IMG/VR virus record: IMGVR_UViG_3300028558_000791
Coordinates: 1-64,000 of that record
Direction: 5' to 3' (one strand)
Length of the DNA stretch: 64,000 nucleotides
Shown here: one piece after another, positions 3,282 to 57,250 of the stretch
Position numbering within the stretch: the first letter of the stretch is position 1
Layout of the letters: each line of letters opens with the position of its first letter
Notes under the pieces: generated by a model
Told to the model about the DNA's origin: nothing
The model's input: only the letters and a program-made list of their open reading frames with translations
The model's database searches: none
Position numbers and translations under genes: made by a program

Positions 3282-3755
3282 GTGAGTACACATTGTGGCA
3301 TTTGTTTTGGCCAAGGGCATACTGAAATTTCATGTGACAGCAAGCCACGAGTACGTGAAGATGACAGTAACCCAATGCATAAGATTGGGTATGGTCGAGG
3401 TGATGATAACACAGTACCTCAGTCACGAAAGACTCAGGCTTATTCTTTCATTAACCCACAAAGGGTTGTCAACGTAGGAGAAAAGAAGATGGACCCGACA
3501 GTCCCCATGCAGGCAGTAGAGAATCTTACCATCAAGGAGATCGTTCATCGTTTGATTGAGCGTAACCTTCAAGCATGGAAGGCTCTCCCTGAAAAGATTC
3601 GAGATGCTATGATGGAACGTCCGCAGGAGTTCCAGCTCATTCCTACCAAGAATCCCAAGGCAGATGACTTCGACTACAGTATCCTTTACAACGGAACTGT
3701 CTGGCGTTACCATCCTACTCAGTTGAGCTGGATCATTGCCGACATCGTACGATGA
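3282..3755 (+). CDS. Hypothetical protein
   Basis: AGGAG RBS before GTG; promoter TTGACA-N16-TAAATT at 3232. Confidence 0.5.
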   Translation: MSTHCGICFGQGHTEISCDSKPRVREDDSNPMHKIGYGRGDDNTVPQSRKTQAYSFINPQRVVNVGEKKMDPTVPMQAVENLTIKEIVHRLIERNLQAWKALPEKIRDAMMERPQEFQLIPTKNPKADDFDYSILYNGTVWRYHPTQLSWIIADIVR

Positions 3756-34205: not shown

Positions 34206-35393
34206 ATGAAAGTAGTGTATACTGGCGAGGATATGCCTGAAACGTTTACAAAATCCATCTTTTTAGCTGGACCTACGCCACGCAATAAAGATGAGCAGGA
34301 ATCCTGGCGTCCCGATGCCTTGCAGATTCTAGAAGATAAAGGATTTGATGGAGTTGTTTTCGTCCCTGAAGGACGTGATGGCCAGTTTAAACTAGATTAT
34401 GATGACCAGGTTGGCTGGGAAGAGAAGTATCTCAACGTGGCTGATTGTATCGTCTTCTGGGTTCCTCGTGACCTAGAACCAGATAGCAAAGGTTATCCTA
34501 AGATGGCAGCCTTTACTACTAATGTAGAGTTTGGAACCTGGCAGTCGAGCGGTAAGATTGTATTTGGTGCTCCGCCTGACGCGACTAAGAATGGGTATTT
34601 AAAACATTACGCCGAGAAGTATAGCGTCCCGGTAGCTGAGTCGCTGGTGGAAACGCTAGACGATGCCATGGGAATGGTAGAAGATGGTGCCGAGCGTAGT
34701 GGCGGGGAGCGATATGTTCCACTGTTCATCTGGAAACAGGATTCATTTCAGTCTTGGTATAAATCTCAGACTGATGCCGGTAATCGTTTAGAAGAAGCGC
34801 GTTTGCTTTATAGCTTTCGTCCCCGCTATAAGAGTTTTGTTTTCCTTTGGATTCTACATACTAAAATCTATGTTGAATCAGAAGATAGGGTAAAAGATAA
34901 TGAATTTGTTCTGGCCCGTCCTGATATTTCTTCTGTCTGCCTATACCACAAAGTGTCTGCTGGCTTCCCTGCGTCGTGGAAAGACATCGAAGTAGTTTTG
35001 GTTAGGGAATTTAGGGCTCCAGCCTCTACTAAAAATGGATTCATTCTGGAACTTCCAGGAGGAAGCTCAACTAAGGAAGCTAATCCAGAAGAGGTTGCTG
35101 CCGAAGAGGTGCATGAGGAGATGGGATTTTATATAGAACCATCTCGTTTGAAACTGCATGGCACTCGTCAGCTAGCTGCTACACTTTCCTCACACAAGTC
35201 TCATCTTTTTTCAGCGGAAATTACCGAAGAAGAAGCTGATTGGTTTAAGTCTCAGGAAGATATTGCTCACGGTAAAGAAGAAGATAGCGAAAGAACATTT
35301 ATTGAAGTTCACCCCATCTCTCAGTTAGTAAATGAAGAGTCAATTGACTGGACTACATTAGGACAAATTCTATCTGTAATTTCTAAAGTTTAA
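34206..35393 (+). CDS. Nucleoside 2-deoxyribosyltransferase-like domain fused to NUDIX hydrolase
   Basis: IFLAGPTPR...WE...TNVEFG; ELPGGS...AAEEVHEEMG. Confidence 0.8.
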   Translation: MKVVYTGEDMPETFTKSIFLAGPTPRNKDEQESWRPDALQILEDKGFDGVVFVPEGRDGQFKLDYDDQVGWEEKYLNVADCIVFWVPRDLEPDSKGYPKMAAFTTNVEFGTWQSSGKIVFGAPPDATKNGYLKHYAEKYSVPVAESLVETLDDAMGMVEDGAERSGGERYVPLFIWKQDSFQSWYKSQTDAGNRLEEARLLYSFRPRYKSFVFLWILHTKIYVESEDRVKDNEFVLARPDISSVCLYHKVSAGFPASWKDIEVVLVREFRAPASTKNGFILELPGGSSTKEANPEEVAAEEVHEEMGFYIEPSRLKLHGTRQLAATLSSHKSHLFSAEITEEEADWFKSQEDIAHGKEEDSERTFIEVHPISQLVNEESIDWTTLGQILSVISKV

Positions 35394-35712: not shown

Positions 35713-35787
35713 GCGCAACTCGACGACATCGGCATGTTTCGTTTCAATTTGTTGGGACTATTTCCCAAATATGGAAGGTGTATTATT

Positions 35788-37419
35788 ATGTCAAACAAGA
35801 ACTTATTCTCAAACAAGAACAAGCTAACGGTATCTGTTTCTAAGAAGGTAACTCTGCCAACCAACACGGTTAATGAGGCAGGTGGAACTGCATATAAGCT
35901 GTCCGACAAGGCTGCTTTGGCGCAGTACGCCATGACTGGTACGTTCAACGGTACATACTATGCATCCGATGCAGATCAACTTAAGAAGGTCCTTGAGTTG
36001 GCAAACAAGGTAGATCCAAAGTTCGTCGCTAAGCTGGCAGTGTACGCACGCCAGAGAGGCTTGATGAAGGATATGCCTGCCGTTCTTGCAGCCGTCATTG
36101 CTGGAAGAGACGCTGACCTATTGGCTACGATTTTCGATAGAGTAATCGACAATCCAAAGATGCTTCGTAACTTCGTTCAGATCATCCGATCTGGCGCAAC
36201 TGGCCGTAAGTCCTTGGGAACTCGCCCAAAGAAGTTGGTACAGAAGTATCTTGAGAACTTGACCGACGAGCAGTTGTTCAAGGCTGATGTTGGTAACGAT
36301 CCGTCGTTGCAGGACATCATCAAGTTGGTTCACCCAAAGCCAACTAACAAGCAGCGTTCTGCGTTGTACGGTTACTTGCTCGACAAGGAGTACAACAAGA
36401 GAGACCTCGTGTCTTTGGCACAACAGTTCGAAGCATTCAAGAAGGATATGAAGGGAGAGATCCCAGATGTTCCGTTCCAGATGTTGACGGCTCTGCCATT
36501 GACTGATACGCACTGGAAGCAGATTGCTGAGAATGCAACCTGGAACCAGATCCGTATGAACCTCAATACGTTTGCTCGTCACAACGTATTGGCTGACAAG
36601 AAGCTGGTCGATGTTTTGGCAGCAAAGCTATCGGACCCAGAGCAGGTCAAGCGTTCCAAGACGTTCCCATATCAGTTGTTCACCACTTACTTGAACGTGG
36701 ACGCCACGATTCCAAGCAAGCTGACGAACGCATTGCAAGATGCGGCTGATTCTTCTTTGGATAACATTCCTGAGTTCCCAGGAAAGGTCTTCGTAATGGT
36801 TGACACTTCTGGTTCTATGGGCTCTGCCGTCACCGGTAAGAGAGTAAATCCAAAGACTGGTAAGGAGGAATCCTTTACGACTAAGGCTCGATGCGTAGAC
36901 GTGGCAGCACTTTTCGCAGCAGCAATCTTGCGCAAGAATCCAGACACTGAGATTGTGCCATTCGACACCTCAGTACATGTTGGTCACCGATTCAATCCAC
37001 GTGATTCGATCATGACCAATGCAAAGACTCTAGCTTCATTCGGTGGTGGTGGTACCAACTGCTCCGCTGCTTTGGAGTATGTCAACAAAAAGGCTGGCAA
37101 GGGCGACCTTGTCATCTACGTGTCTGACAATGAGTCATGGGTTGATACGAAGGCATCTAACTCAGGTGTGTTCGGATACTACCGCCGTAATGGCACTGCC
37201 ACTATGGAAGAGTGGAATAAGTTCGCAGCCCGTAACAAGGGTGCAAAGCTTGTCTGTATCGACATTCAACCAAACTCCTCCACCCAAGCACACGACAGGG
37301 ATGACATCCTGAACGTGGGAGGATTCAGTGACCAGGTGTTCGATGTAATCGCAAGATTCGCCGAGCTTGGAAACAACAAGGATCTCTGGATCAAGACGAT
37401 CGAAGACGTCAAACTCTAA
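35788..37419 (+). CDS. rsr: Ro60 / TROVE domain RNA-binding protein (Rsr) with vWA domain
   Basis: NEAGGTAY, TGTFNGTYY, LVHPKP, RMNLNTFARH, MIDAS VDTSGSM, GGGTNCS, VSDNESW. Confidence 0.93.
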   Translation: MSNKNLFSNKNKLTVSVSKKVTLPTNTVNEAGGTAYKLSDKAALAQYAMTGTFNGTYYASDADQLKKVLELANKVDPKFVAKLAVYARQRGLMKDMPAVLAAVIAGRDADLLATIFDRVIDNPKMLRNFVQIIRSGATGRKSLGTRPKKLVQKYLENLTDEQLFKADVGNDPSLQDIIKLVHPKPTNKQRSALYGYLLDKEYNKRDLVSLAQQFEAFKKDMKGEIPDVPFQMLTALPLTDTHWKQIAENATWNQIRMNLNTFARHNVLADKKLVDVLAAKLSDPEQVKRSKTFPYQLFTTYLNVDATIPSKLTNALQDAADSSLDNIPEFPGKVFVMVDTSGSMGSAVTGKRVNPKTGKEESFTTKARCVDVAALFAAAILRKNPDTEIVPFDTSVHVGHRFNPRDSIMTNAKTLASFGGGGTNCSAALEYVNKKAGKGDLVIYVSDNESWVDTKASNSGVFGYYRRNGTATMEEWNKFAARNKGAKLVCIDIQPNSSTQAHDRDDILNVGGFSDQVFDVIARFAELGNNKDLWIKTIEDVKL

Positions 37420-37494: not shown

Positions 37495-37911
37495 ATGAAT
37501 AAGTTAGAAGATTTAGTGGCGGCAGCAAGACTAGCCGCCCAACATTCGTACAGTCCATACAGCAACTTCAAAGTTGCATCCGCCGTAGAAATGGAAGATG
37601 GAAGCATCTTTAGCGGCTCTAATGTAGAGAATGCGTCTTACGGTCTCACTATCTGTGCAGAGCGCAACGCAATCTTTCAAGCTGTGTCTAAGGGACATCG
37701 CCTAATAAAACGTATCATTGTCTACGCTCCTTCACCAACTGTTCGTACTGGCCCTTGTGGAGCCTGTAGGCAGGTAATTAAAGAATTTGCCGATGAATAT
37801 ACACTAATCATTGGCGCCTGTAACTCAGACGATATATTAACTTTTACAATGGAAGATTTGTTACCAAAGAGTTTTGGTCCCGATAATCTTCTAAAGAAAA
37901 GAAACCAATGA
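37495..37911 (+). CDS. cdd: Cytidine deaminase
   Basis: YSPYS, NVENASYGLTICAER, PCGACRQ. Confidence 0.93.
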   Translation: MNKLEDLVAAARLAAQHSYSPYSNFKVASAVEMEDGSIFSGSNVENASYGLTICAERNAIFQAVSKGHRLIKRIIVYAPSPTVRTGPCGACRQVIKEFADEYTLIIGACNSDDILTFTMEDLLPKSFGPDNLLKKRNQ

Positions 37912-38753
37912 TTAAGCGAAATGGCGTAGAGGTAATGAACGCCCGCACTAAAAACGTCTCTATTGCCAAAGAAACAATCGCTATAATCAACAACCAAAAA
38001 TACACCAATCTCAATGGAGATACAGTAGATATCTCAGTAGAAATGGATGCGGCCATAGACGGCACTCATTACTATGAGGCTGACGTTTTAGTCGGCATGC
38101 CCGCCGATCAGGCTCCCATTCACGCTACGATTGAGGTAGTAAATGAGACTACTGCTCAAGCTGCTGTTCGATTGCAAGCTAAAGGAAAAACTAATCTAGT
38201 TGCCCTTAACTTCGCTTCAGCGCGTAATCAAGGTGGAGGCTTTCTTTCTGGAGCTTTGGCTCAAGAAGAAGACTTGTGTAGGGCTTCTGGCCTATATGGT
38301 TGCCTGAAACGCAAACCATTGTTCTACAATGCAAACATCCTGTGTGACGATGCATTCTATACAAATGGAGTTCTCTACTCACCTAACGTTCCGTTCTTTA
38401 GGGATGATCATAATCTGTTTTTAGAGAAGCCTTTTCCGCTTTCTATCGTCTCAGCACCAGCTCCTAACCTTTCTAGCACCAAGTCGAACATCGACCCTAA
38501 AGTATTAACCTCTCTTATTAGAGAGCGTACTGTTAGGATTCTACAGGTGGCTCATGCCAATGGGCATAAGAACATCATTTTAGGTGCCTGGGGCTGTGGA
38601 GCCTTCGGAAATGATCCTGAAATGGTATCAAAAGCATTTATGTTGGCCCTAACTAAAGTTCCATATTTCGAGCATGTAACCTTTGCGGTATATGATACCA
38701 GAGAGCCGTACGTTTTATATGAAACGTTCAAAGAAGTCTGTAACGCTGTATAG
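37908..38753 (+). CDS. TIGR02452/DUF2263 bacterial-type poly(ADP-ribose) glycohydrolase
   Basis: LNFASA..GGGF..GALAQEEDLCRAS, LGAWGCGAFGN. Confidence 0.9.
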   Translation: MIKRNGVEVMNARTKNVSIAKETIAIINNQKYTNLNGDTVDISVEMDAAIDGTHYYEADVLVGMPADQAPIHATIEVVNETTAQAAVRLQAKGKTNLVALNFASARNQGGGFLSGALAQEEDLCRASGLYGCLKRKPLFYNANILCDDAFYTNGVLYSPNVPFFRDDHNLFLEKPFPLSIVSAPAPNLSSTKSNIDPKVLTSLIRERTVRILQVAHANGHKNIILGAWGCGAFGNDPEMVSKAFMLALTKVPYFEHVTFAVYDTREPYVLYETFKEVCNAV

Positions 38754-39315
38754 ACCAACCGGCCCAAAAGAGTTAGATTTGATTAAAAAGTCTAACTATA
38801 AGAAGTTCCCGCCCCGCTTGCCTGAACAACCAATTTTCTATCCAGTTCTTACAAAAGAGTATGCGGTAAAGATTGCACGAGATTGGAATGTAAAAGCTTC
38901 CGGAATAGGTTTTGTACTAGAATTCAAGGTCCGAAAGGATTTTCTAGACAAATATCCAGTGCAAGTAGCTGGCGGCAATTCTCATCAGGAGTATTGGATT
39001 CCAGCGGAAGAATTAGAAGACTTCAATCAAGCTCTAGTGGGCGAGATAAAGGTCACTGAGACGTACCAAGAGTGGTACATTTACATCCTAAAGTGTTCTG
39101 ATGGTACTTTGTACACAGGTATCACGAACAATCTGGGTAAACGAATCAAACAACATAACGAGGGTAAAGGCGCAAAGTACACGAAGGGTCGTGGTCCCGT
39201 TGCCCTTGTTAAGTTTTTCACCCGATTAACTAAGGGTGAAGCCCTGAAACTTGAATATCAGATCAAACAACTCTCTAAAGAAGAGAAACTGAATTACAAT
39301 GAGCAGAAGAGGTAA
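38719..39315 (+). CDS. Conserved LYRP..RLPEQPIFYPV domain fused to GIY-YIG nuclease
   Basis: C-terminal YIYILKCSDGTLYTGITNN..R..HN..GAKYT. Confidence 0.75.
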   Translation: MKRSKKSVTLYRPTGPKELDLIKKSNYKKFPPRLPEQPIFYPVLTKEYAVKIARDWNVKASGIGFVLEFKVRKDFLDKYPVQVAGGNSHQEYWIPAEELEDFNQALVGEIKVTETYQEWYIYILKCSDGTLYTGITNNLGKRIKQHNEGKGAKYTKGRGPVALVKFFTRLTKGEALKLEYQIKQLSKEEKLNYNEQKR

Positions 39316-40807: not shown

Positions 40808-41416
40808 ATGACTAAAGCATTATATGTTGGTAGTTTCGACCCTATCACCAACGGTCATATTGATATTATGAAGCGTAGCTTACAGTTCTGTAAGCAACTG
40901 GTGATTGGGATAGGTATCAATCCTAACAAGACTACTATGTTTGATGAGCGGGAGAGGAACTCCATGATTTTTCAAACGATAGTGAAGGAGTTTGACTTCC
41001 TTCATTCAACCAATACTTCGGTTGCTTCTTTTCAGGGACTTACAGTAGAGTATGCTAAAGAAATTGGTGCAACGATTCTAATTCGCGGAATTAGATCCGT
41101 TTCTGATTTCGAATATGAAATTAATTTGGCCAACATCAACAAGGTTCTGGCCCCATCAATTGAAACAATTTTCCTGCCCACCAGTCCTGATCTGGCGGTT
41201 GTCTCCTCTTCAATGGTAAAAGAAATTGCAAAGTTGAACGGAGATATTTCAAGATTCGTACCCAGCTATATTGCCGAGAGGATTCATTCAAAATTCGGTT
41301 TCTTCAAGCATGGCAAGACAGAGATTGGCACTGATACTATCAATAGATTACGAGAAGCTACAGTAGCTATTGAGAAAGAATTGGGAATCAAACCAAAAGA
41401 TGAGGGCGAAAAATAA
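40808..41416 (+). CDS. coaD: Phosphopantetheine adenylyltransferase
   Basis: GSFDPITNGH, IRGIRSVSDFEYE, VSSSMVKEIA. Confidence 0.92.
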   Translation: MTKALYVGSFDPITNGHIDIMKRSLQFCKQLVIGIGINPNKTTMFDERERNSMIFQTIVKEFDFLHSTNTSVASFQGLTVEYAKEIGATILIRGIRSVSDFEYEINLANINKVLAPSIETIFLPTSPDLAVVSSSMVKEIAKLNGDISRFVPSYIAERIHSKFGFFKHGKTEIGTDTINRLREATVAIEKELGIKPKDEGEK

Positions 41417-41430
41417 AAATTAGCGACGGG

Positions 41431-41458
41431 TTGACGAGCTAATTTTTAAGACTACAAT
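41431..41458 (+). promoter_or_regulatory. sigma70-like promoter of the RNA cluster
   Basis: TTGACG-N16-TACAAT. Confidence 0.55.
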
Positions 41459-42245: not shown

Positions 42246-42353
42246 TGACGAATGTCCGAGTAGGATTACATTTTTATGCAAAAAAACCGATGGGGTTCGA
42301 TTCCCCTTTAGGGCTGGCGCCAGGCAAAACATCTTATTCATTTCTTGTCGTCA
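42246..42353 (+). ncRNA. Y RNA-like 1 (T-arm cargo)
   Basis: TGACGA-ATG..GAGTAGGAT-TACA / ATCTTATTC..TTG-TCGTCA; internal GGGG-TTCGATT-CCCC. Confidence 0.8.
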
Positions 42354-42727: not shown

Positions 42728-42801
42728 GACTTTGTGGACAAATTATTAAGTCACTCCCGTTAGAGGGAGAGATGTAAGTGCAAGGCTTGCCAAGGTCACC
42801 A
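42728..42801 (+). ncRNA. tRNA-like RNA with 6-nt anticodon loop (GTTAGA)
   Basis: GACTTTG/CAAGGTC plus ACCA; CTCCC/GGGAG; T-loop TGCAAGG. Confidence 0.7.
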
Positions 42802-42802
42802 T

Positions 42803-43019
42803 GTAACAAATGCCCCGAGAGGATTACATTCATTAGGAGAACGAGGTCGTGGGTCCGAGTCCCACCACTGCTACCATCCCAAAGCACGTCATTAAATTGA
42901 AGGGACACTCGAAAGAGTGATGTTGCCTGACTTACTTAGCGAAAGCTATCTAAGTCCTCATAGCAGTGTAGCTCAGTTGGCAGAGCGCGAAAAACATCTT
43001 TTCAAATTTTTGTTGTTAC
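42803..43019 (+). ncRNA. Y RNA-like 3 containing a circularly permuted tRNA with internal CCA
   Basis: GTAACAA-ATG..GAGAGGAT-TACA / ATCTTTTC..TTG-TTGTTAC; T arm plus CACTGCT-A-CCA precedes AGCAGTG plus D arm. Confidence 0.85.
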
Positions 43020-43515: not shown

Positions 43516-43624
43516 AATAATACGGGGATTGATTAGACCGAAATGATCCGTATTAGCTGTTATGTTTGGTCAATTCTGCATAACGACAGAAGCTATGTCC
43601 AGTAAAATGGAGTCGTCTTCTGAA

Positions 43625-43880
43625 GATGAATGCCGATAAGGATTACACTAATACAACCGAGCCTCACGCCGTAGAATGCCCGCAAGGATTTCATTCCACA
43701 AATACCGGGTGGCTCACATCTCCCACTACATTACAAGAGATGATGAAAATTAAACTGAGATGTCTGACAAGCCTGCCTACCAGTTAGAGTAACAGGCTCA
43801 GTGGTGTAACTGATAATACACTGTGATTACTTGTTTACTTGTAAACAAAATAATTGCTATCTTTATCAACTTTAGTCATC
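43625..43880 (+). ncRNA. Y RNA-like 4 (large unknown cargo)
   Basis: GATGA-ATG..GATAAGGAT-TACA / ATCTTTATC..TAG-TCATC. Confidence 0.7.
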
Positions 43881-43887
43881 AAAATAT

Positions 43888-43982: not shown

Positions 43983-44411
43983 ATGTTTACTTCAACCGGA
44001 ATCCTTCAATATGATCCTGGTCAGGGTCTAAAACATTTCGATCCATGGTGGGCTCTTCTAGCCTGTGACGATGAAGTATCTAGGTATTATGCCTGGTTAC
44101 TAAAGAGACACGGAGTAGAAGTCTACCCTAACGATAAAGGGTTGTGGGGAACACACGTTTCAGTTTTGAAAGGTGCCGTCCCTCCCAATCAAGATAAGTG
44201 GGGCAAGTATCAAGACTTCGAAGTAGAAATCCATCTCAATCATCTTGTCCGTTATGATAACGGGAAACATGCTTGGGTAGATGTATACTCAGAAGATTTA
44301 TCAGCAATCCGACAGGAGTTAGGCTTCGATGCCAAGCCCTGGTACCATCTGACAATTGGTAGGTTGGTGAGACCATTTGATGTGGACTTTACCAAATATG
44401 GCATAACCTGA
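43983..44411 (+). CDS. 2H phosphoesterase family protein
   Basis: Two HxS/T motifs (THVSV, YHLTI) about 65 aa apart. Confidence 0.7.
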   Translation: MFTSTGILQYDPGQGLKHFDPWWALLACDDEVSRYYAWLLKRHGVEVYPNDKGLWGTHVSVLKGAVPPNQDKWGKYQDFEVEIHLNHLVRYDNGKHAWVDVYSEDLSAIRQELGFDAKPWYHLTIGRLVRPFDVDFTKYGIT

Positions 44412-44502: not shown

Positions 44503-44569
44503 AAGTCAAATGCCTTGATAGGATTACATTTTACCAAAAGAAAACATCTTATCTACTTTTTGTTGACTT
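44503..44569 (+). ncRNA. Y RNA-like 5 (minimal, stem only)
   Basis: AAGTCAA-ATG..GATAGGAT-TACA / AAAC-ATCTTATC..TTG-TTGACTT. Confidence 0.8.
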
Positions 44570-44572
44570 TTT

Positions 44573-44666
44573 CGATCACGCGTAGCTGGTTGCTCGGGCG
44601 AGACTTATAATCTTGCAAGGACTGATATTCCGTAACGGCAGGGTTCGATTCCCTGGTGATCGACCA
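44573..44666 (+). tRNA. Atypical tRNA-Ile(TAT), 6-bp anticodon stem, long variable region
   Basis: CGATCAC/GTGATCG plus ACCA; GCGAGA-CTTATAA-TCTTGC. Confidence 0.75.
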
Positions 44667-45193: not shown

Positions 45194-45270
45194 CGTGCTA
45201 TAGCTCAGTTGGTTAGAGTGCCTCTCTGATAAGGAGGAAGTCCCAGGTTCGAATCCCGGTAGCACGACCA
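45194..45270 (+). tRNA. tRNA-Ile(GAT)
   Basis: Canonical cloverleaf. Confidence 0.92.
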
Positions 45271-45481
45271 GTAACGAATGCAGTTAGGATTACATCCATA
45301 ACGACCTTAAAGTAGTTGACAGAGCCGCGAGGCGCTGAATCGATGGCAACAAAACGATCACCAGGTAATGCTGAGGTCCATCAGACTCTTGAGTCGAAGT
45401 TGCGGGGCGAACGGGAAGTATCTCGAAAGAGACTTTCAATGTGCCGGTCACACCCAGTATCTTAGCAATTTTTGTCGTTAT
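45271..45481 (+). ncRNA. Y RNA-like 6 (large unknown cargo)
   Basis: GTAACGA-ATG..GTTAGGAT-TACA / ATCTTAGC..TTG-TCGTTAT. Confidence 0.78.
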
Positions 45482-45485
45482 ACAT

Positions 45486-45561
45486 GGGACGGTAGCTCAG
45501 TGGTTAGAGCGCAACGCTGATAACGTTGAAGTCGATGGTTCGATTCCATCTCGTCCTACCA
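45486..45561 (+). tRNA. tRNA-Ile(GAT)
   Basis: Canonical cloverleaf. Confidence 0.95.
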
Positions 45562-45697: not shown

Positions 45698-45786
45698 AGC
45701 CTGCCCACATGGATGGAAACTGTGGCGTCACCTTGGTAAACCAAGTAGTAAAGTGACAAGCCTGCCCACATGGTTGGAAACTGTGG
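45698..45786 (+). repeat. 28-nt direct repeat x2 with 33-nt hairpin spacer
   Basis: AGCCTGCCCACATGGWTGGAAACTGTGG at 45698 and 45759. Confidence 0.85.
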
Positions 45787-45894: not shown

Positions 45895-46048
45895 GAGGCA
45901 AATGCACCGAAGGTTTACATTTGGAATAATCATATCGTCGTAAGACGGTCGCAGGTTCGAATCCTGCAACTTCCGAAAGGAAGTTTGGCTGAGTGGTCTA
46001 AAGCAATGATGCTGAAAAGCATGCTAACTTTCAAATTTTTGTTGCTTC
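45895..46048 (+). ncRNA. yrlA: Y RNA-like 7, classical YrlA architecture
   Basis: GAGGCAA-ATG / TTG-TTGCTTC; T arm GCAGG-TTCGAAT-CCTGC, acceptor AACTTCC-GAAA-GGAAGTT, then D arm. Confidence 0.85.
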
Positions 46049-46184: not shown

Positions 46185-46511
46185 ATGAACCAAGACAAGC
46201 CGACAATGAAGGACCTGAAAGAAGGTCCGCCATTACTTTGTCCTATCTGTGATAGACCAAACTACTTCCCTTCAGACCATCACATGGTTCCGAAGTCAAG
46301 AGGCGGCAAGTCTACTGAAACGATCTGTGAAGATTGCCACAAAGCAATCCATGCACACTTCACCAATAAAGAATTGGAAGAAACGTATCATACGCCAGAA
46401 GCTTTGTTAGCTCATGAAGGTTTTGCCAAACAGATTAAATTTCTATCGAAACAAGATCCCGGCGGCAGATCGAAAACTAAAAAGAATAAAGATCGTCTAA
46501 GACGAGAATAA
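46185..46511 (+). CDS. HNH endonuclease
   Basis: CPIC, DHHMVPKSRGG, CEDCHKAIH. Confidence 0.85.
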   Translation: MNQDKPTMKDLKEGPPLLCPICDRPNYFPSDHHMVPKSRGGKSTETICEDCHKAIHAHFTNKELEETYHTPEALLAHEGFAKQIKFLSKQDPGGRSKTKKNKDRLRRE

Positions 46512-50072: not shown

Positions 50073-50149
50073 GGGTCTTTTGATGTAAAGGCTGGCCTCT
50101 AGACTTTAGTGCTAGAGGACATCGGGTTCGACTCCCGAATGATCCGCCA
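50073..50149 (+). ncRNA. tRNA-like RNA, no D stem, loop CT-TTA-GT
   Basis: GGGTC/GATCC plus GCCA; CCTCTAG/CTAGAGG; TCGGG-TTCGACT-CCCGA. Confidence 0.65.
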
Positions 50150-56566: not shown

Positions 56567-56898
56567 ACATGAGCTTAGCTTGGTCAAAGGATATGGAATT
56601 GGATCCTGGTACGTTTGGAGGTTCTCCGGCATGCCATGTTTTAGTAGATATGATGAATCACAATGTTATTCCTATTATAGAGAAGCATCGTGTTTTATCA
56701 TTCATCAATGATGCTATCTATCAATTCAAGTGGTTATCCACTGTGAAGGAGTATGGCGTCAAGGAGAGGTCTATGGTTCTGATGAGGGACGATATTCTAT
56801 CTAGGGTGGATCATATGCCATATCCTGCCAAGTTTAATTCACATCTGAAGAACGTGATAACTCACCACTTCAGACGATACTTGAAAGAAGAGACCTAG
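56563..56898 (+). CDS. Hypothetical protein
   Basis: Packed ORF. Confidence 0.5.
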   Translation: MNMSLAWSKDMELDPGTFGGSPACHVLVDMMNHNVIPIIEKHRVLSFINDAIYQFKWLSTVKEYGVKERSMVLMRDDILSRVDHMPYPAKFNSHLKNVITHHFRRYLKEET

Positions 56899-57250
56899 AC
56901 AATCGCTCCCGTAAGGAGAGGAAAGTCGGAGCTACGTAGGGCAATTTGCTGGCTAACGGCCAGGCGCAGTGATGCGACAGATAGTGCAACAGAAAAGAAA
57001 CCGCCATGAATCCGCCAGGCCCGAAAGGGAGCAACGGTAGATGGTAAGGGTGAAATGGTGGGGTAAGAGCCCACCGCACCTATAGTGATATAGGTGGCAA
57101 GGTAAACCTCAGATGTAGCAAGCTAAATAGAGAGTGACTTGTCCGGTCAATACTCTCGGGTTAGTGCTGGAGCCATTAGGTAACTAACGGCCAAGATTAA
57201 TGATTGTCTCGATTTATAGACAGGACTCCGCTTATAGGGTGTCTTCTTTC
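56883..57250 (+). ncRNA. rnpB: RNase P RNA, bacterial type A
   Basis: GAGGAAAGTCGGAG, AGTGCAACAGAAA, GGGTGAAA..GGTAAGAG, GGTAAACC, ACAGGACTCCGCTTA; P1 GAAAGAAGA/TCTTCTTTC. Confidence 0.93.

What the first reader, a model, noticed from the sequence alone, without database searches (positions are those of the whole stretch)
45271..45481. Second large-cargo Y RNA-like element between two tRNA-Ile genes
Seen: it begins at the base after CCA and ends 4 nt before the next tRNA. The interior is multi-branched (GACC/GGTC, GCC-GCGA-GGC, GACTC/GAGTC, TCTC-GAAA-GAGA). GNRA loops suggest a compact tertiary fold. I could not match it to a known ribozyme.
Basis: partly seen in the sequence, partly recalled or inferred. 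Interest (0 to 1): 0.7.

Follow-up and report, generated by a model that had tools for sequence, protein, structure and literature searches.

The report
Phage Y RNA with novel domain
A 211-base non-coding RNA gene, wedged between two tRNA genes of a giant soil phage, has the stem of a Y RNA (the partner of the Ro60 protein, which the phage also encodes) but carries a conserved, previously undescribed four-armed RNA domain where bacterial Y RNAs normally carry a tRNA look-alike.

Summary
The element runs from 45271, the base after the CCA of tRNA-Ile(GAU), to 45481, 4 nt before the next tRNA-Ile.

The window is the start of a 481-kb phage record. It encodes a Ro60 orthologue at 35734-37419 and a long tRNA array. 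At least six array spacers in the window hold paralogous elements with one shared outer structure. That structure matches the Ro60-binding stem of the Rfam YrlA consensus.

The finding has this stem. In place of a tRNA-like module it has a 147-nt four-way junction.

Four diverged lineages carry the same domain inside the same stem, always in a tRNA array: the window group, L103, L128 and L130. All three large records that carry it encode Ro60. Across them 48 pairs are 97% paired and 20 show compensatory changes, against 2-6 in slid controls. The junction sequences are nearly invariant.

A metatranscriptome contig carries a variant with four compensatory pairs. No copy matches Rfam, and nothing in GenBank phages or 185,579 species genomes matches.

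Verdict: a real, conserved RNA gene, best read as a phage Y RNA with a new effector module. Ro60 binding and the module's role are inferred, not shown.

The parts
35734..37419 (+). Ro60 (Rsr/TROVE) orthologue, 561 aa; the presumed protein partner
   Evidence: Pfam vWA_Ro60 52 bits and TROVE 37 bits. PDB hits 9KOP and 9L5Y (Thermus phage phiLo Ro60, E 3e-12) and 2NVO (D. radiodurans Rsr, E 9e-9).
45194..45270 (+). tRNA-Ile(GAU) no. 1, CCA encoded; its 3' end abuts the element
   Evidence: ARAGORN; Rfam tRNA 66 bits.
45271..45481 (+). The element: Y RNA-like outer stem plus a 147-nt four-way-junction domain
45271..45277 (+). Stem I, 5' strand GUAACGA. It pairs with 45475-45481 (UCGUUAU) and holds the start of the CGAA motif (45275-45278).
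   Evidence: 3 of 6 pairs show compensatory change across lineages; covaries among paralogues.
45278..45282 (+). 5' side of the internal loop, AUGCA. Together with the stem end it reads ACGAAUGCA (YrlA consensus CgaAUGCuu).
   Evidence: motif GNCGAAN0-1G in PMC4201824.
45283..45290 (+). Stem II, 5' strand GUUAGGAU. It pairs with 45459-45466 (AUCUUAGC) and includes an invariant G.U pair, so it works only on the + strand RNA.
   Evidence: 5 of 8 pairs compensatory.
45291..45302 (+). J1, UACAUCCAUAAC. CAUAAC is nearly invariant in all lineages.
45303..45306 (+). P1, 5' strand GACC. It pairs with 45446-45449 (GGUC) and closes the four-way junction.
   Evidence: A-U to G-C compensatory change in L130.
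45307..45315 (+). J2, UUAAAGUAG (consensus YUAARGUAG), a conserved junction strand
45320..45337 (+). H1 hairpin, CAG-A-GCC GCGA GGC-G-CUG; the loop is GYGA in all lineages
   Evidence: 2 compensatory pairs.
45341..45347 (+). Conserved block CGAUGGC (consensus CGAYGGC), leading into P2
45346..45403 (+). P2 arm. GCAAC (45346-45350) pairs with GUUGC (45399-45403). It encloses hairpin a (about 45356-45382, loop GGUAAUG at 45364-45370) and hairpin b (GACUC 45384-45388 with GAGUC 45391-45395).
   Evidence: P2 has 2 compensatory pairs, plus the A-U to G-C change in the RNA-library variant. The hairpin b arms are conserved (one G-C to G.U change in L103) and the loop is 2-4 nt. The hairpin a loop is GGUAAY in L128 and L130; pairing inside hairpin a is unresolved.
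45406..45445 (+). P3 arm. GGCG (45406-45409) pairs with UGCC (45442-45445). Internal loop AACG (45410-45413) opposite AAUG (45438-45441). Variable hairpin H3 with GAAA loop (45425-45428).
   Evidence: 6 compensatory pairs in P3 and H3. The loop changes GAAA to GAGA in the RNA variant, still GNRA.
45450..45458 (+). J4, ACACCCAGU. Variable; L128 and L130 have an extra GAAA-capped hairpin here.
45467..45474 (+). 3' side of the internal loop, AAUUUUUG (YrlA consensus AaAaAcUuG)
45482..45485 (+). 4-nt spacer ACAU before the next tRNA
   Evidence: AU in L002.
45486..45561 (+). tRNA-Ile(GAU) no. 2. RNase P cleavage at its 5' end would release the element's 3' end (inferred).
41431..41458 (+). Promoter-like site TTGACG-16-TACAAT at the head of the array; candidate start of a polycistronic tRNA and Y RNA transcript
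   Evidence: consensus match only. No promoter or terminator lies next to the element.

Best explanation
The element is a phage-encoded Y RNA, a small non-coding partner of the phage's own Ro60 protein. Its effector module is a new conserved four-way-junction domain instead of the tRNA-like domain of YrlA.

Proposed course:
1. It is transcribed with the tRNA array on the + strand.
2. tRNA maturation enzymes cut it free: 3' processing of tRNA-Ile no. 1 at 45270/45271, and RNase P at 45485/45486. The phage carries its own RNase P RNA.
3. Its ends pair into stem I, internal loop, stem II, and Ro60 binds the ACGAAUGC strand of this structure.
4. The 147-nt domain sits in the apical loop of that hairpin. 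As in the known Ro60-Y RNA-PNPase complexes, it would tether Ro60 to a particular protein or RNA, or gate Ro60's cavity.

Shown here: the gene's limits, its conserved structure, its homology with the other Y-like stems, its co-occurrence with Ro60, and its presence in RNA libraries.

Inferred: processing, Ro60 binding, and any role of the domain.
For: - Partner gene: Ro60 orthologue on the same strand, 7.9 kb upstream.
- Stem family: the outer stem matches in sequence and shape at least five other elements in the window, 23 distinct versions in related phages, and 8 or more per array in distant phages. An independent RNAalifold run on the minimal members finds 7 of 14 pairs compensatory.
- Match to YrlA: both strands match the Rfam YrlA consensus stem and contain the CGAA motif named as the Ro60 contact (PMC4201824, PMC12135203).
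- Paralogues: they carry T arms, D arms and closed acceptor hairpins like YrlA.
- Domain conservation: four lineages share it. Their Ro60 proteins are only 47-52% identical (G005, G007) to the window's, and their G+C runs from 46 to 64%. It always sits inside the Y stem, after a tRNA.
- Covariation: 20 of 48 pairs compensatory, 97% of cells paired, slid controls 2-6; 13 compensatory pairs on a plain MAFFT alignment.
- Selection: the first 140 nt have no substitution in four DNA variants whose flanks are 78-84% identical. The neighbouring tRNAs differ at 5-33% of positions.
- Strand: an invariant G.U pair makes the structure specific to the + strand.
- RNA evidence: a 248-nt contig at depth 26 in a metatranscriptome carries a variant with four compensatory pairs, while the neighbouring protein gene is not covered. 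Four RNA runs from three studies hold part of the element.
- Ro60 co-occurrence: all seven large related or homologue-bearing records tested encode Ro60.
Against: - No direct evidence of Ro60 binding. The complex prediction was not run for RNA.
- The element gives no Rfam YrlA or YrlB hit even at E < 10. Its first motif position is A, not G.
- Ro60 lies 7.9 kb away here and 28 kb away in G005. That is further than the 2 kb reported for Salmonella.
- All the phages are huge phages with tRNA arrays, so co-occurrence with Ro60 is not phylogenetically independent.
- The element is absent from the same site in close relatives: L005 and an RNA contig in X21. It is therefore dispensable or recently gained.
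- Metatranscriptome contigs may contain DNA.
- The fold's energy is not better than that of shuffled sequence.
Confidence: 0.6

Rival explanations
1. The four-way-junction domain is an autonomous functional RNA: a catalytic, ligand-binding or protein-binding RNA of a new class. The recurrent outer stem would be a generic clamp or processing cassette of tRNA arrays that stabilises any inserted RNA, with no role for Ro60.
For: - The junction strands are nearly invariant while the helices covary and accept insertions at their tips. This pattern is typical of ribozymes and aptamers.
- The same stem carries unrelated inserts of 9 to about 190 nt.
- Every element starts directly after a tRNA.
- Ro60 is not adjacent.
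Against: - The stem is not generic. Its loop and stem sequences match the YrlA Ro60-binding consensus on both strands.
- All large records with the domain encode Ro60.
- No known ribozyme or riboswitch model matches any of three copies scanned, representing three of the four lineages.
- The two readings are not exclusive: the domain may be such an RNA and still be carried by a Y scaffold.
Confidence: 0.22
2. It is a selfish or passively shuffled DNA cassette (MITE-like, or spread by the array's HNH and GIY-YIG homing endonucleases). Its near-identity among diverged phages would reflect recent transfer, not RNA function.
For: - Presence or absence at an otherwise conserved site.
- No substitutions in 140 nt against 16-22% divergence in the flanks.
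- Terminal inverted 7-mers.
- HNH (46185-46511) and GIY-YIG (38683-39315) genes lie nearby.
Against: - No target-site duplication.
- The stems contain conserved G.U pairs that would be A.C mismatches on the other strand or in DNA hairpins.
- The H3 hairpin has diverged by many compensated changes while the rest stayed fixed. This indicates long purifying selection rather than a recent copy.
- Homologues exist in lineages with 48% Ro60 identity, and they covary.
- Cassette mobility may still explain how the gene moves.
Confidence: 0.08
3. It is a degenerate tRNA, an intron-containing tRNA, or a small protein-coding gene.
For: - A 7-bp terminal stem followed by an unpaired A recalls an acceptor stem, and the topology is cloverleaf-like.
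- Frames of 49-53 codons overlap the element.
Against: - No tRNA call by ARAGORN and no Rfam tRNA hit at E < 10.
- No T or D loop.
- Indels of 1, 3, 5 and 8 nt among the variants break every frame.
Confidence: 0.02

Closest known systems
YrlA (Rfam RF02553): bacterial and mycobacteriophage Y RNA with a tRNA-like module (Chen et al. 2014, PMC4201824)
   Same: - Encoded in a genome with Ro60, on the same strand.
- The ends pair into a stem with an internal loop.
- The 5' strand CGAAUGC and the 3' strand UUGUCG match the family consensus.
- The module branches from the top of the stem as a four-way junction, the same topology as the YrlA tRNA-like domain.
- Lies among tRNA genes in a phage.
   Different: - No T arm, D arm or acceptor-like hairpin.
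- The three arms are a GYGA-capped hairpin, a branched arm with two hairpins, and an arm with a conserved ARCG/AAUG internal loop.
- No Rfam score at all.
- An extra helix (stem II) lies between the Ro-binding stem and the module.
- About twice the length of YrlA: 211 nt against a 114-position model.
YrlB / Yrn2-type Y RNAs (Rfam RF02565): long hairpins with a small loop
   Same: With the 147-nt domain removed, the remainder is the same hairpin as the minimal paralogue at 44504-44568: stem I, loop, stem II, then an apical loop starting UACAU. That paralogue gives a weak full-length YrlB match of 22 bits.
   Different: The finding carries a large structured insertion in the apical loop. The scores are far below the gathering value of 97 bits.
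Yrl1 / Yrl2 of Thermus phage phiLo, bound by phage Ro60 (PMC12135203; PDB 9L5Y)
   Same: - Phage-encoded Y RNA-like RNAs, identified by a 5'-3' stem flanking a bulge with the CGAA motif.
- The phiLo Ro60 is the closest solved relative of this phage's Ro60.
   Different: Those RNAs were found next to the Ro60 gene and are described as stem-bulge-stem molecules. According to the parts of the paper read here, they have no large junction domain and are not reported as parts of a tRNA array.
Stable small RNAs in the phage T4 tRNA gene cluster (species 1 and 2; recalled from memory, not tested here)
   Same: Non-tRNA small RNAs encoded inside a phage tRNA cluster and released by tRNA processing enzymes.
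   Different: No sequence comparison was made. T4 has no Ro60, and the function of those RNAs is unknown.

Membership tests
Y RNA (bacterial/phage, YrlA/YrlB type) | Encoded in a genome that has a Ro60/Rsr orthologue, nearby and on the same strand | tested here: met
   Ro60 at 35734-37419 (+), 7.9 kb upstream. Ro60 is also present in G001-G005 and G007. The distance is larger than the 2 kb reported for Salmonella, and is 28 kb in G005.
Y RNA (bacterial/phage, YrlA/YrlB type) | 5' and 3' ends pair into a stem interrupted by an internal loop or bulge | tested here: met
   Stem I (45271-45277 with 45475-45481) and stem II (45283-45290 with 45459-45466). Compensatory changes in 3 of 6 and 5 of 8 pairs; 7 of 14 in the minimal paralogues.
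Y RNA (bacterial/phage, YrlA/YrlB type) | 5'-strand motif GNCGAAN0-1G (CGAA core) at the Ro60 contact site | tested here: inconclusive
   The element reads AACGAAUG: the CGAA core and 7 of 8 positions match, but the first G is an A. The window paralogue at 42246 and the out-of-window paralogue at genome position 76352 read GACGAAUG, a full match. The wider string CGAAUGC equals the Rfam YrlA consensus.
Y RNA (bacterial/phage, YrlA/YrlB type) | Binds Ro60 and depends on it for accumulation | not testable with these tools
   Complex prediction did not fold a protein-RNA job. This needs immunoprecipitation or a gel shift.
YrlA (RF02553) | tRNA-like module: T arm, D arm, closed acceptor-like hairpin | tested here: not met
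   No T- or D-loop sequences; no tRNA or YrlA hit at E < 10 within 45265-45490. The paralogue at 45895-46048 has them.
YrlA / YrlB (Rfam models) | Reaches the family's gathering score | tested here: not met
   No match at all for the element. The paralogues score 22-24 bits against cut-offs of 69 and 97.
tRNA / tRNA with intron | Cloverleaf with D and T loops, recognised by ARAGORN or Rfam RF00005 | tested here: not met
Known self-cleaving ribozymes, riboswitches and other Rfam 15 families | Match to any of 4227 covariance models | tested here: not met
   No match at E < 10 for the window copy. Only chance-level hits (E 5-9) for L130 and L128.
MITE-like mobile element | Terminal inverted repeats with target-site duplication, working at the DNA level | tested here: not met
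   No duplication at filled versus empty sites. The stems rely on G.U pairs.

The most novel reading that the evidence does not exclude
Huge phages that encode Ro60 may use the Y RNA stem as a general scaffold, displaying a set of different RNA modules. This phage alone has modules of none, T arm only, full tRNA mimic, tRNA mimic with encoded CCA and an insert, and two unrelated large domains. On this reading the domain in the finding is a new class of functional RNA with an invariant junction core. It would aim the Ro60 machine, or an exonuclease tethered to it, at a specific target such as damaged tRNAs or a host defence RNA. Alternatively it would itself bind a ligand or catalyse a reaction.
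Probability: 0.3. Interest if true: 0.8.

Novelty: new variant of a known kind. Interest (0 to 1): 0.62.

Why it matters
Bacterial Y RNAs are thought to work as adaptors: one end holds Ro60 and the other selects a partner. So far the only well-described bacterial modules are the tRNA mimic and a plain hairpin.

This element is a third kind of module. It is large, strongly conserved and structurally defined, and it sits on the same scaffold in several lineages of uncultured giant phages. Up to seven or more Y-like paralogues sit beside it in one tRNA array.

This gives a concrete handle on what phage Ro60 complexes do during infection. It also adds a candidate new structured RNA class with a ready-made comparative model for probing, binding and structural work.

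Tried and rejected
- Rfam: gathering and permissive scans of the window, the element alone and two distant homologues found nothing inside the element.
- Folding energy is not significant on either strand.
- Coding potential is rejected: indels among the variants break all frames.
- GenBank phages: blastn matched only the flanking tRNAs for the window copy and nothing for L130 or L103.
- Species genomes: an exact 21-mer found nothing. A looser pattern gave 21 hits in G+C-rich genomes; none is a convincing homologue (best 13 bits, L119).
- Metagenome pattern hits L089, L090, L092, L094, L097 and L099, and the viral hit L127 (a coding region), are chance matches.
- Cargo model R1 finds a single copy in the 481-kb genome. 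It finds none in 26 loci of relatives apart from L002.
- Antisense idea: complementarity to E. coli 16S, 23S and 5S rRNA and to the phage RNase P RNA is no longer than in shuffles. No antisense target was found in the phage genome.
- The 13-mer match at genome position 78272 lies in a coding-looking stretch with no partner strand.
- Hammerhead-like strings (CUGAUGA in L103) are not conserved and no hammerhead model matches.
- L087:18008-18173 shares only the Y stem and an H3-like hairpin and is not syntenic, so it was not counted as a homologue.
- Complex prediction of Ro60 with the RNA was not folded, so it gives no evidence either way.
- RtcB is absent from the genome.

Full report
**Setting.**
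- The window is the first 64 kb of a 480,838-bp virus record.
- It holds 29 tRNA genes in arrays at 41.5-52 kb and 62-64 kb.
- It also holds a bacterial class A RNase P RNA at 56887-57250, scoring 272 bits.
- A 561-aa ORF at 35734-37419 has Pfam TROVE and vWA_Ro60 domains. Its closest solved relatives are the Ro60 of Thermus phage phiLo (9KOP, 9L5Y) and D. radiodurans Rsr (2NVO).

**The observation.**
- tRNA-Ile(GAU) occupies 45194-45270 with its CCA, and the next tRNA-Ile(GAU) starts at 45486.
- The sequence between them begins GUAACGA at 45271. It ends UCGUUAU at 45481 and is followed by ACAU.
- No Rfam family matches inside the element, even at E < 10.
- The folding energy is not better than that of shuffles, with z about -1. 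Energy alone therefore gives no support.

**What the outer part is.**
- The string AGGAUUACAU recurs on the + strand through the array. Each copy lies in the 5' strand of the same structure.
- That structure is a 6-7 bp terminal stem ending in C(G/A)A, an internal loop (5' AUGC.., 3' ..AUUUUUG), an 8-bp second stem, and then UACAU leading into a variable insert.
- Members in the window:

| Coordinates | Insert |
|---|---|
| 42246-42353 | T arm |
| 42803-43019 | permuted tRNA-like module with encoded CCA and an extra insert |
| about 43624-43881 | large, unrelated insert |
| 44504-44568 | stem only |
| 45271-45481 | the finding |
| 45895-46048 | T arm, GAAA-closed acceptor hairpin, D arm |

- A further member lies at genome position 76352.
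- Related phages add more, giving 23 distinct stem versions with inserts of 9 to about 190 nt.
- RNAalifold on seven minimal members recovers both stems, with 7 of 14 pairs compensatory.
- The Rfam YrlA consensus reads cggCgaAUGCuu at its 5' end and AaAaAcUuGucGccg at its 3' end. The finding reads ACGAAUGCAG and AAUUUUUGUCGUUAU.
- Chen et al. (PMC4201824) defined GNCGAAN0-1G as the likely Ro60 contact. The phiLo study (PMC12135203) used the CGAA motif inside a 5'-3' stem with a bulge to find phage Y RNAs that did bind phage Ro60.
- The outer part of the finding is therefore a Y RNA-type Ro60-binding stem by sequence and shape.

**What the inner part is.**
- Removing 45303-45449 leaves a hairpin like the minimal paralogue. 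The 147-nt domain is an insertion in its apical loop.
- Close relatives carry almost the same element: L002, L095, L093/L098 and several soil runs. There are no substitutions in the first 140 nt in four DNA variants.
- The flanks of those relatives are only 78-84% identical, and the neighbouring tRNAs differ at 5-33% of positions.
- What variation there is sits in the tip of one hairpin and is compensated.
- A 248-nt contig from a sediment metatranscriptome (depth 26) carries a further variant:
  - A-U to G-C in P2.
  - G-C to A-U, G.U to U-A and G-C to A-U in H3.
  - GAAA to GAGA in the loop.
- Patterns built on the conserved blocks then found three distant copies:

| Locus | Context | R1 score |
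|---|---|---|
| L103 5898-6116 | G+C 64% | 59 bits |
| L130 433-650 | 363-kb record | 51 bits |
| L128 about 3439-3730 | complete 407-kb record; 66 extra nt in one arm | 27.6 bits |

- All three lie in dense tRNA arrays, directly after a tRNA and inside the same Y-type stem. Both large records encode Ro60 that is 47-52% identical to the window's.

**Comparative structure.**
- An anchor-based alignment of seven sequences, folded with RNAalifold, gave 48 pairs.
- 323 of 334 cells are paired, and 20 pairs show changes on both sides. Controls with the 3' partner slid by 1-3 columns gave 2-6 such pairs and about 35% pairing.
- A plain MAFFT alignment of five sequences already gave 13 compensatory pairs.
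- The model:
  - P1: GACC with GGUC.
  - H1: GCC-GYGA-GGC, extended by CAG with CUG.
  - P2: GCAAC with GUUGC. It encloses hairpin a (loop GGUAAY) and hairpin b (GACUC with GAGUC, arms conserved, loop 2-4 nt).
  - P3: GGCG with UGCC, then a conserved internal loop ARCG opposite AAUG, then a variable hairpin.
- Nearly invariant single-stranded blocks are CAUAAC before P1, YUAARGUAG after it, CGAYGGC before P2, and GG between P2 and P3.
- The minimum-free-energy pairing inside P2 is not kept in the distant copies.
- An invariant G.U pair in stem II makes the fold specific to the + strand.

**What it is not.**
- Not a tRNA.
- Not coding: the variants differ by frame-breaking indels.
- Not a known ribozyme or riboswitch.
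- Not present in GenBank phages.
- Not found in one genome per prokaryote species by exact pattern.
- Not detectably antisense to rRNA, to the phage RNase P RNA or to the phage genome.

**Presence and absence.**
- In L005 the two tRNA-Ile genes are 9 nt apart.
- An RNA contig in run X21 shows an empty site.
- Another relative (X23) has a different Y-like element after the second tRNA-Ile.
- Y-like cassettes are therefore gained, lost or exchanged within arrays. HNH and GIY-YIG endonuclease genes lie nearby.
- No target duplication is seen.

**Mechanism, with its standing.**
- Shown:
  - A conserved, strand-specific, covarying RNA structure with defined ends.
  - Homology of its stem to YrlA-type stems.
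  - Co-occurrence with Ro60.
  - Sequence present in RNA libraries.
- Inferred from the known biology of Y RNAs (PMC4201824, PMC12135203):
  - Release from the polycistronic array transcript by tRNA 3' processing and RNase P.
  - Binding of the CGAAUGC strand by phage Ro60.
  - Use of the domain as the effector end, to tether a partner or to gate the Ro60 cavity.
- The identity of the partner is unknown.
- The near-invariance of 140 nt suggests dense contacts or a tight tertiary fold.

**Novelty.** Phage Ro60 and phage Y RNA-like RNAs are known. A Y-type stem carrying this domain is not in Rfam 15 or in the papers found. I rate it a new variant of a known kind, and the domain itself is a candidate new RNA class.

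Noticed in passing
window 56887-57250 (+): A full-length bacterial class A RNase P RNA gene (272 bits, model 1-367) is encoded by the phage, a few kb from its tRNA arrays.
   Followed up: no
window 42803-43019 (+): A Y-like element whose module is a permuted tRNA mimic: T arm, acceptor 3' strand with an encoded CCA, then about 85 nt with two GAAA-capped hairpins, then acceptor 5' strand and D arm. Relatives L095 and L086 have the same element without the 85-nt insert. It recalls M. smegmatis YrlA, which RNase P cuts and which then receives CCA.
   Followed up: partly
window 42246-42353, 44504-44568, 45895-46048 (+); genome 76352-76473: Further Y RNA-like elements with a T arm only, no module, and a full YrlA-like module (weak Rfam YrlA at 24 bits and YrlB at 22 bits). 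Each lies directly after or before a tRNA.
   Followed up: partly
window about 43624-43881 (+); L005 1226-1450, L086 18308-18528, L087 18673-18872, L095 4208-4004: Another large-insert Y-like class (stem AGAUGA with UCAUCU). Its 160-190-nt insert is unrelated to the finding's and is conserved across more diverged relatives.
   Followed up: partly
window 45699-45725 and 45760-45786 (+): Two copies of a 27-nt hairpin motif (GCCUGCCCACAUGG.UGGAAACUGUGG) upstream of tRNA-Thr. The same motif appears at the matching place in L004 and L005. Function unknown.
   Followed up: no
window 50073-50149 (+); 42728-42801 (+); 44573-44666 (+): Three unusual tRNA calls: a predicted suppressor-type tRNA with anticodon UUA (reads UAA), a tRNA-like gene with an irregular anticodon loop, and an unusually long (94-nt) tRNA-Ile(UAU) call with a weak tRNA-Sec-like score.
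   Followed up: no
window 46185-46511 (+), 38683-39315 (+): HNH and GIY-YIG endonuclease genes in or beside the tRNA array. They are possible drivers of the cassette shuffling seen between relatives.
   Followed up: no
window 34206-35393, 37495-38753, 40808-41416, 43983-44411 (+): The genes around Ro60 suggest nucleotide, NAD and RNA-end metabolism: nucleoside deoxyribosyltransferase-like plus NUDIX, dCMP deaminase, microbial PARG, a cytidylyltransferase-like protein, and a weak 2H phosphoesterase hit inside the array. No RtcB is present, but there are two CCA-adding-type nucleotidyltransferases elsewhere in the genome.
   Followed up: partly
L002 3376-3390; L095 at the matching place: A 15-nt hairpin (UCCCUCUUAUGAGGG) lies between the CCA of tRNA-Ile and the start of the element in two relatives, but not in the window.
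   Followed up: no
L128 and L130 (records of 407 kb and 363 kb): Distant huge phages carry 28-35 tRNA genes within 8-14 kb. Eight or more Y-like stems are interleaved with them in each array.
   Followed up: partly
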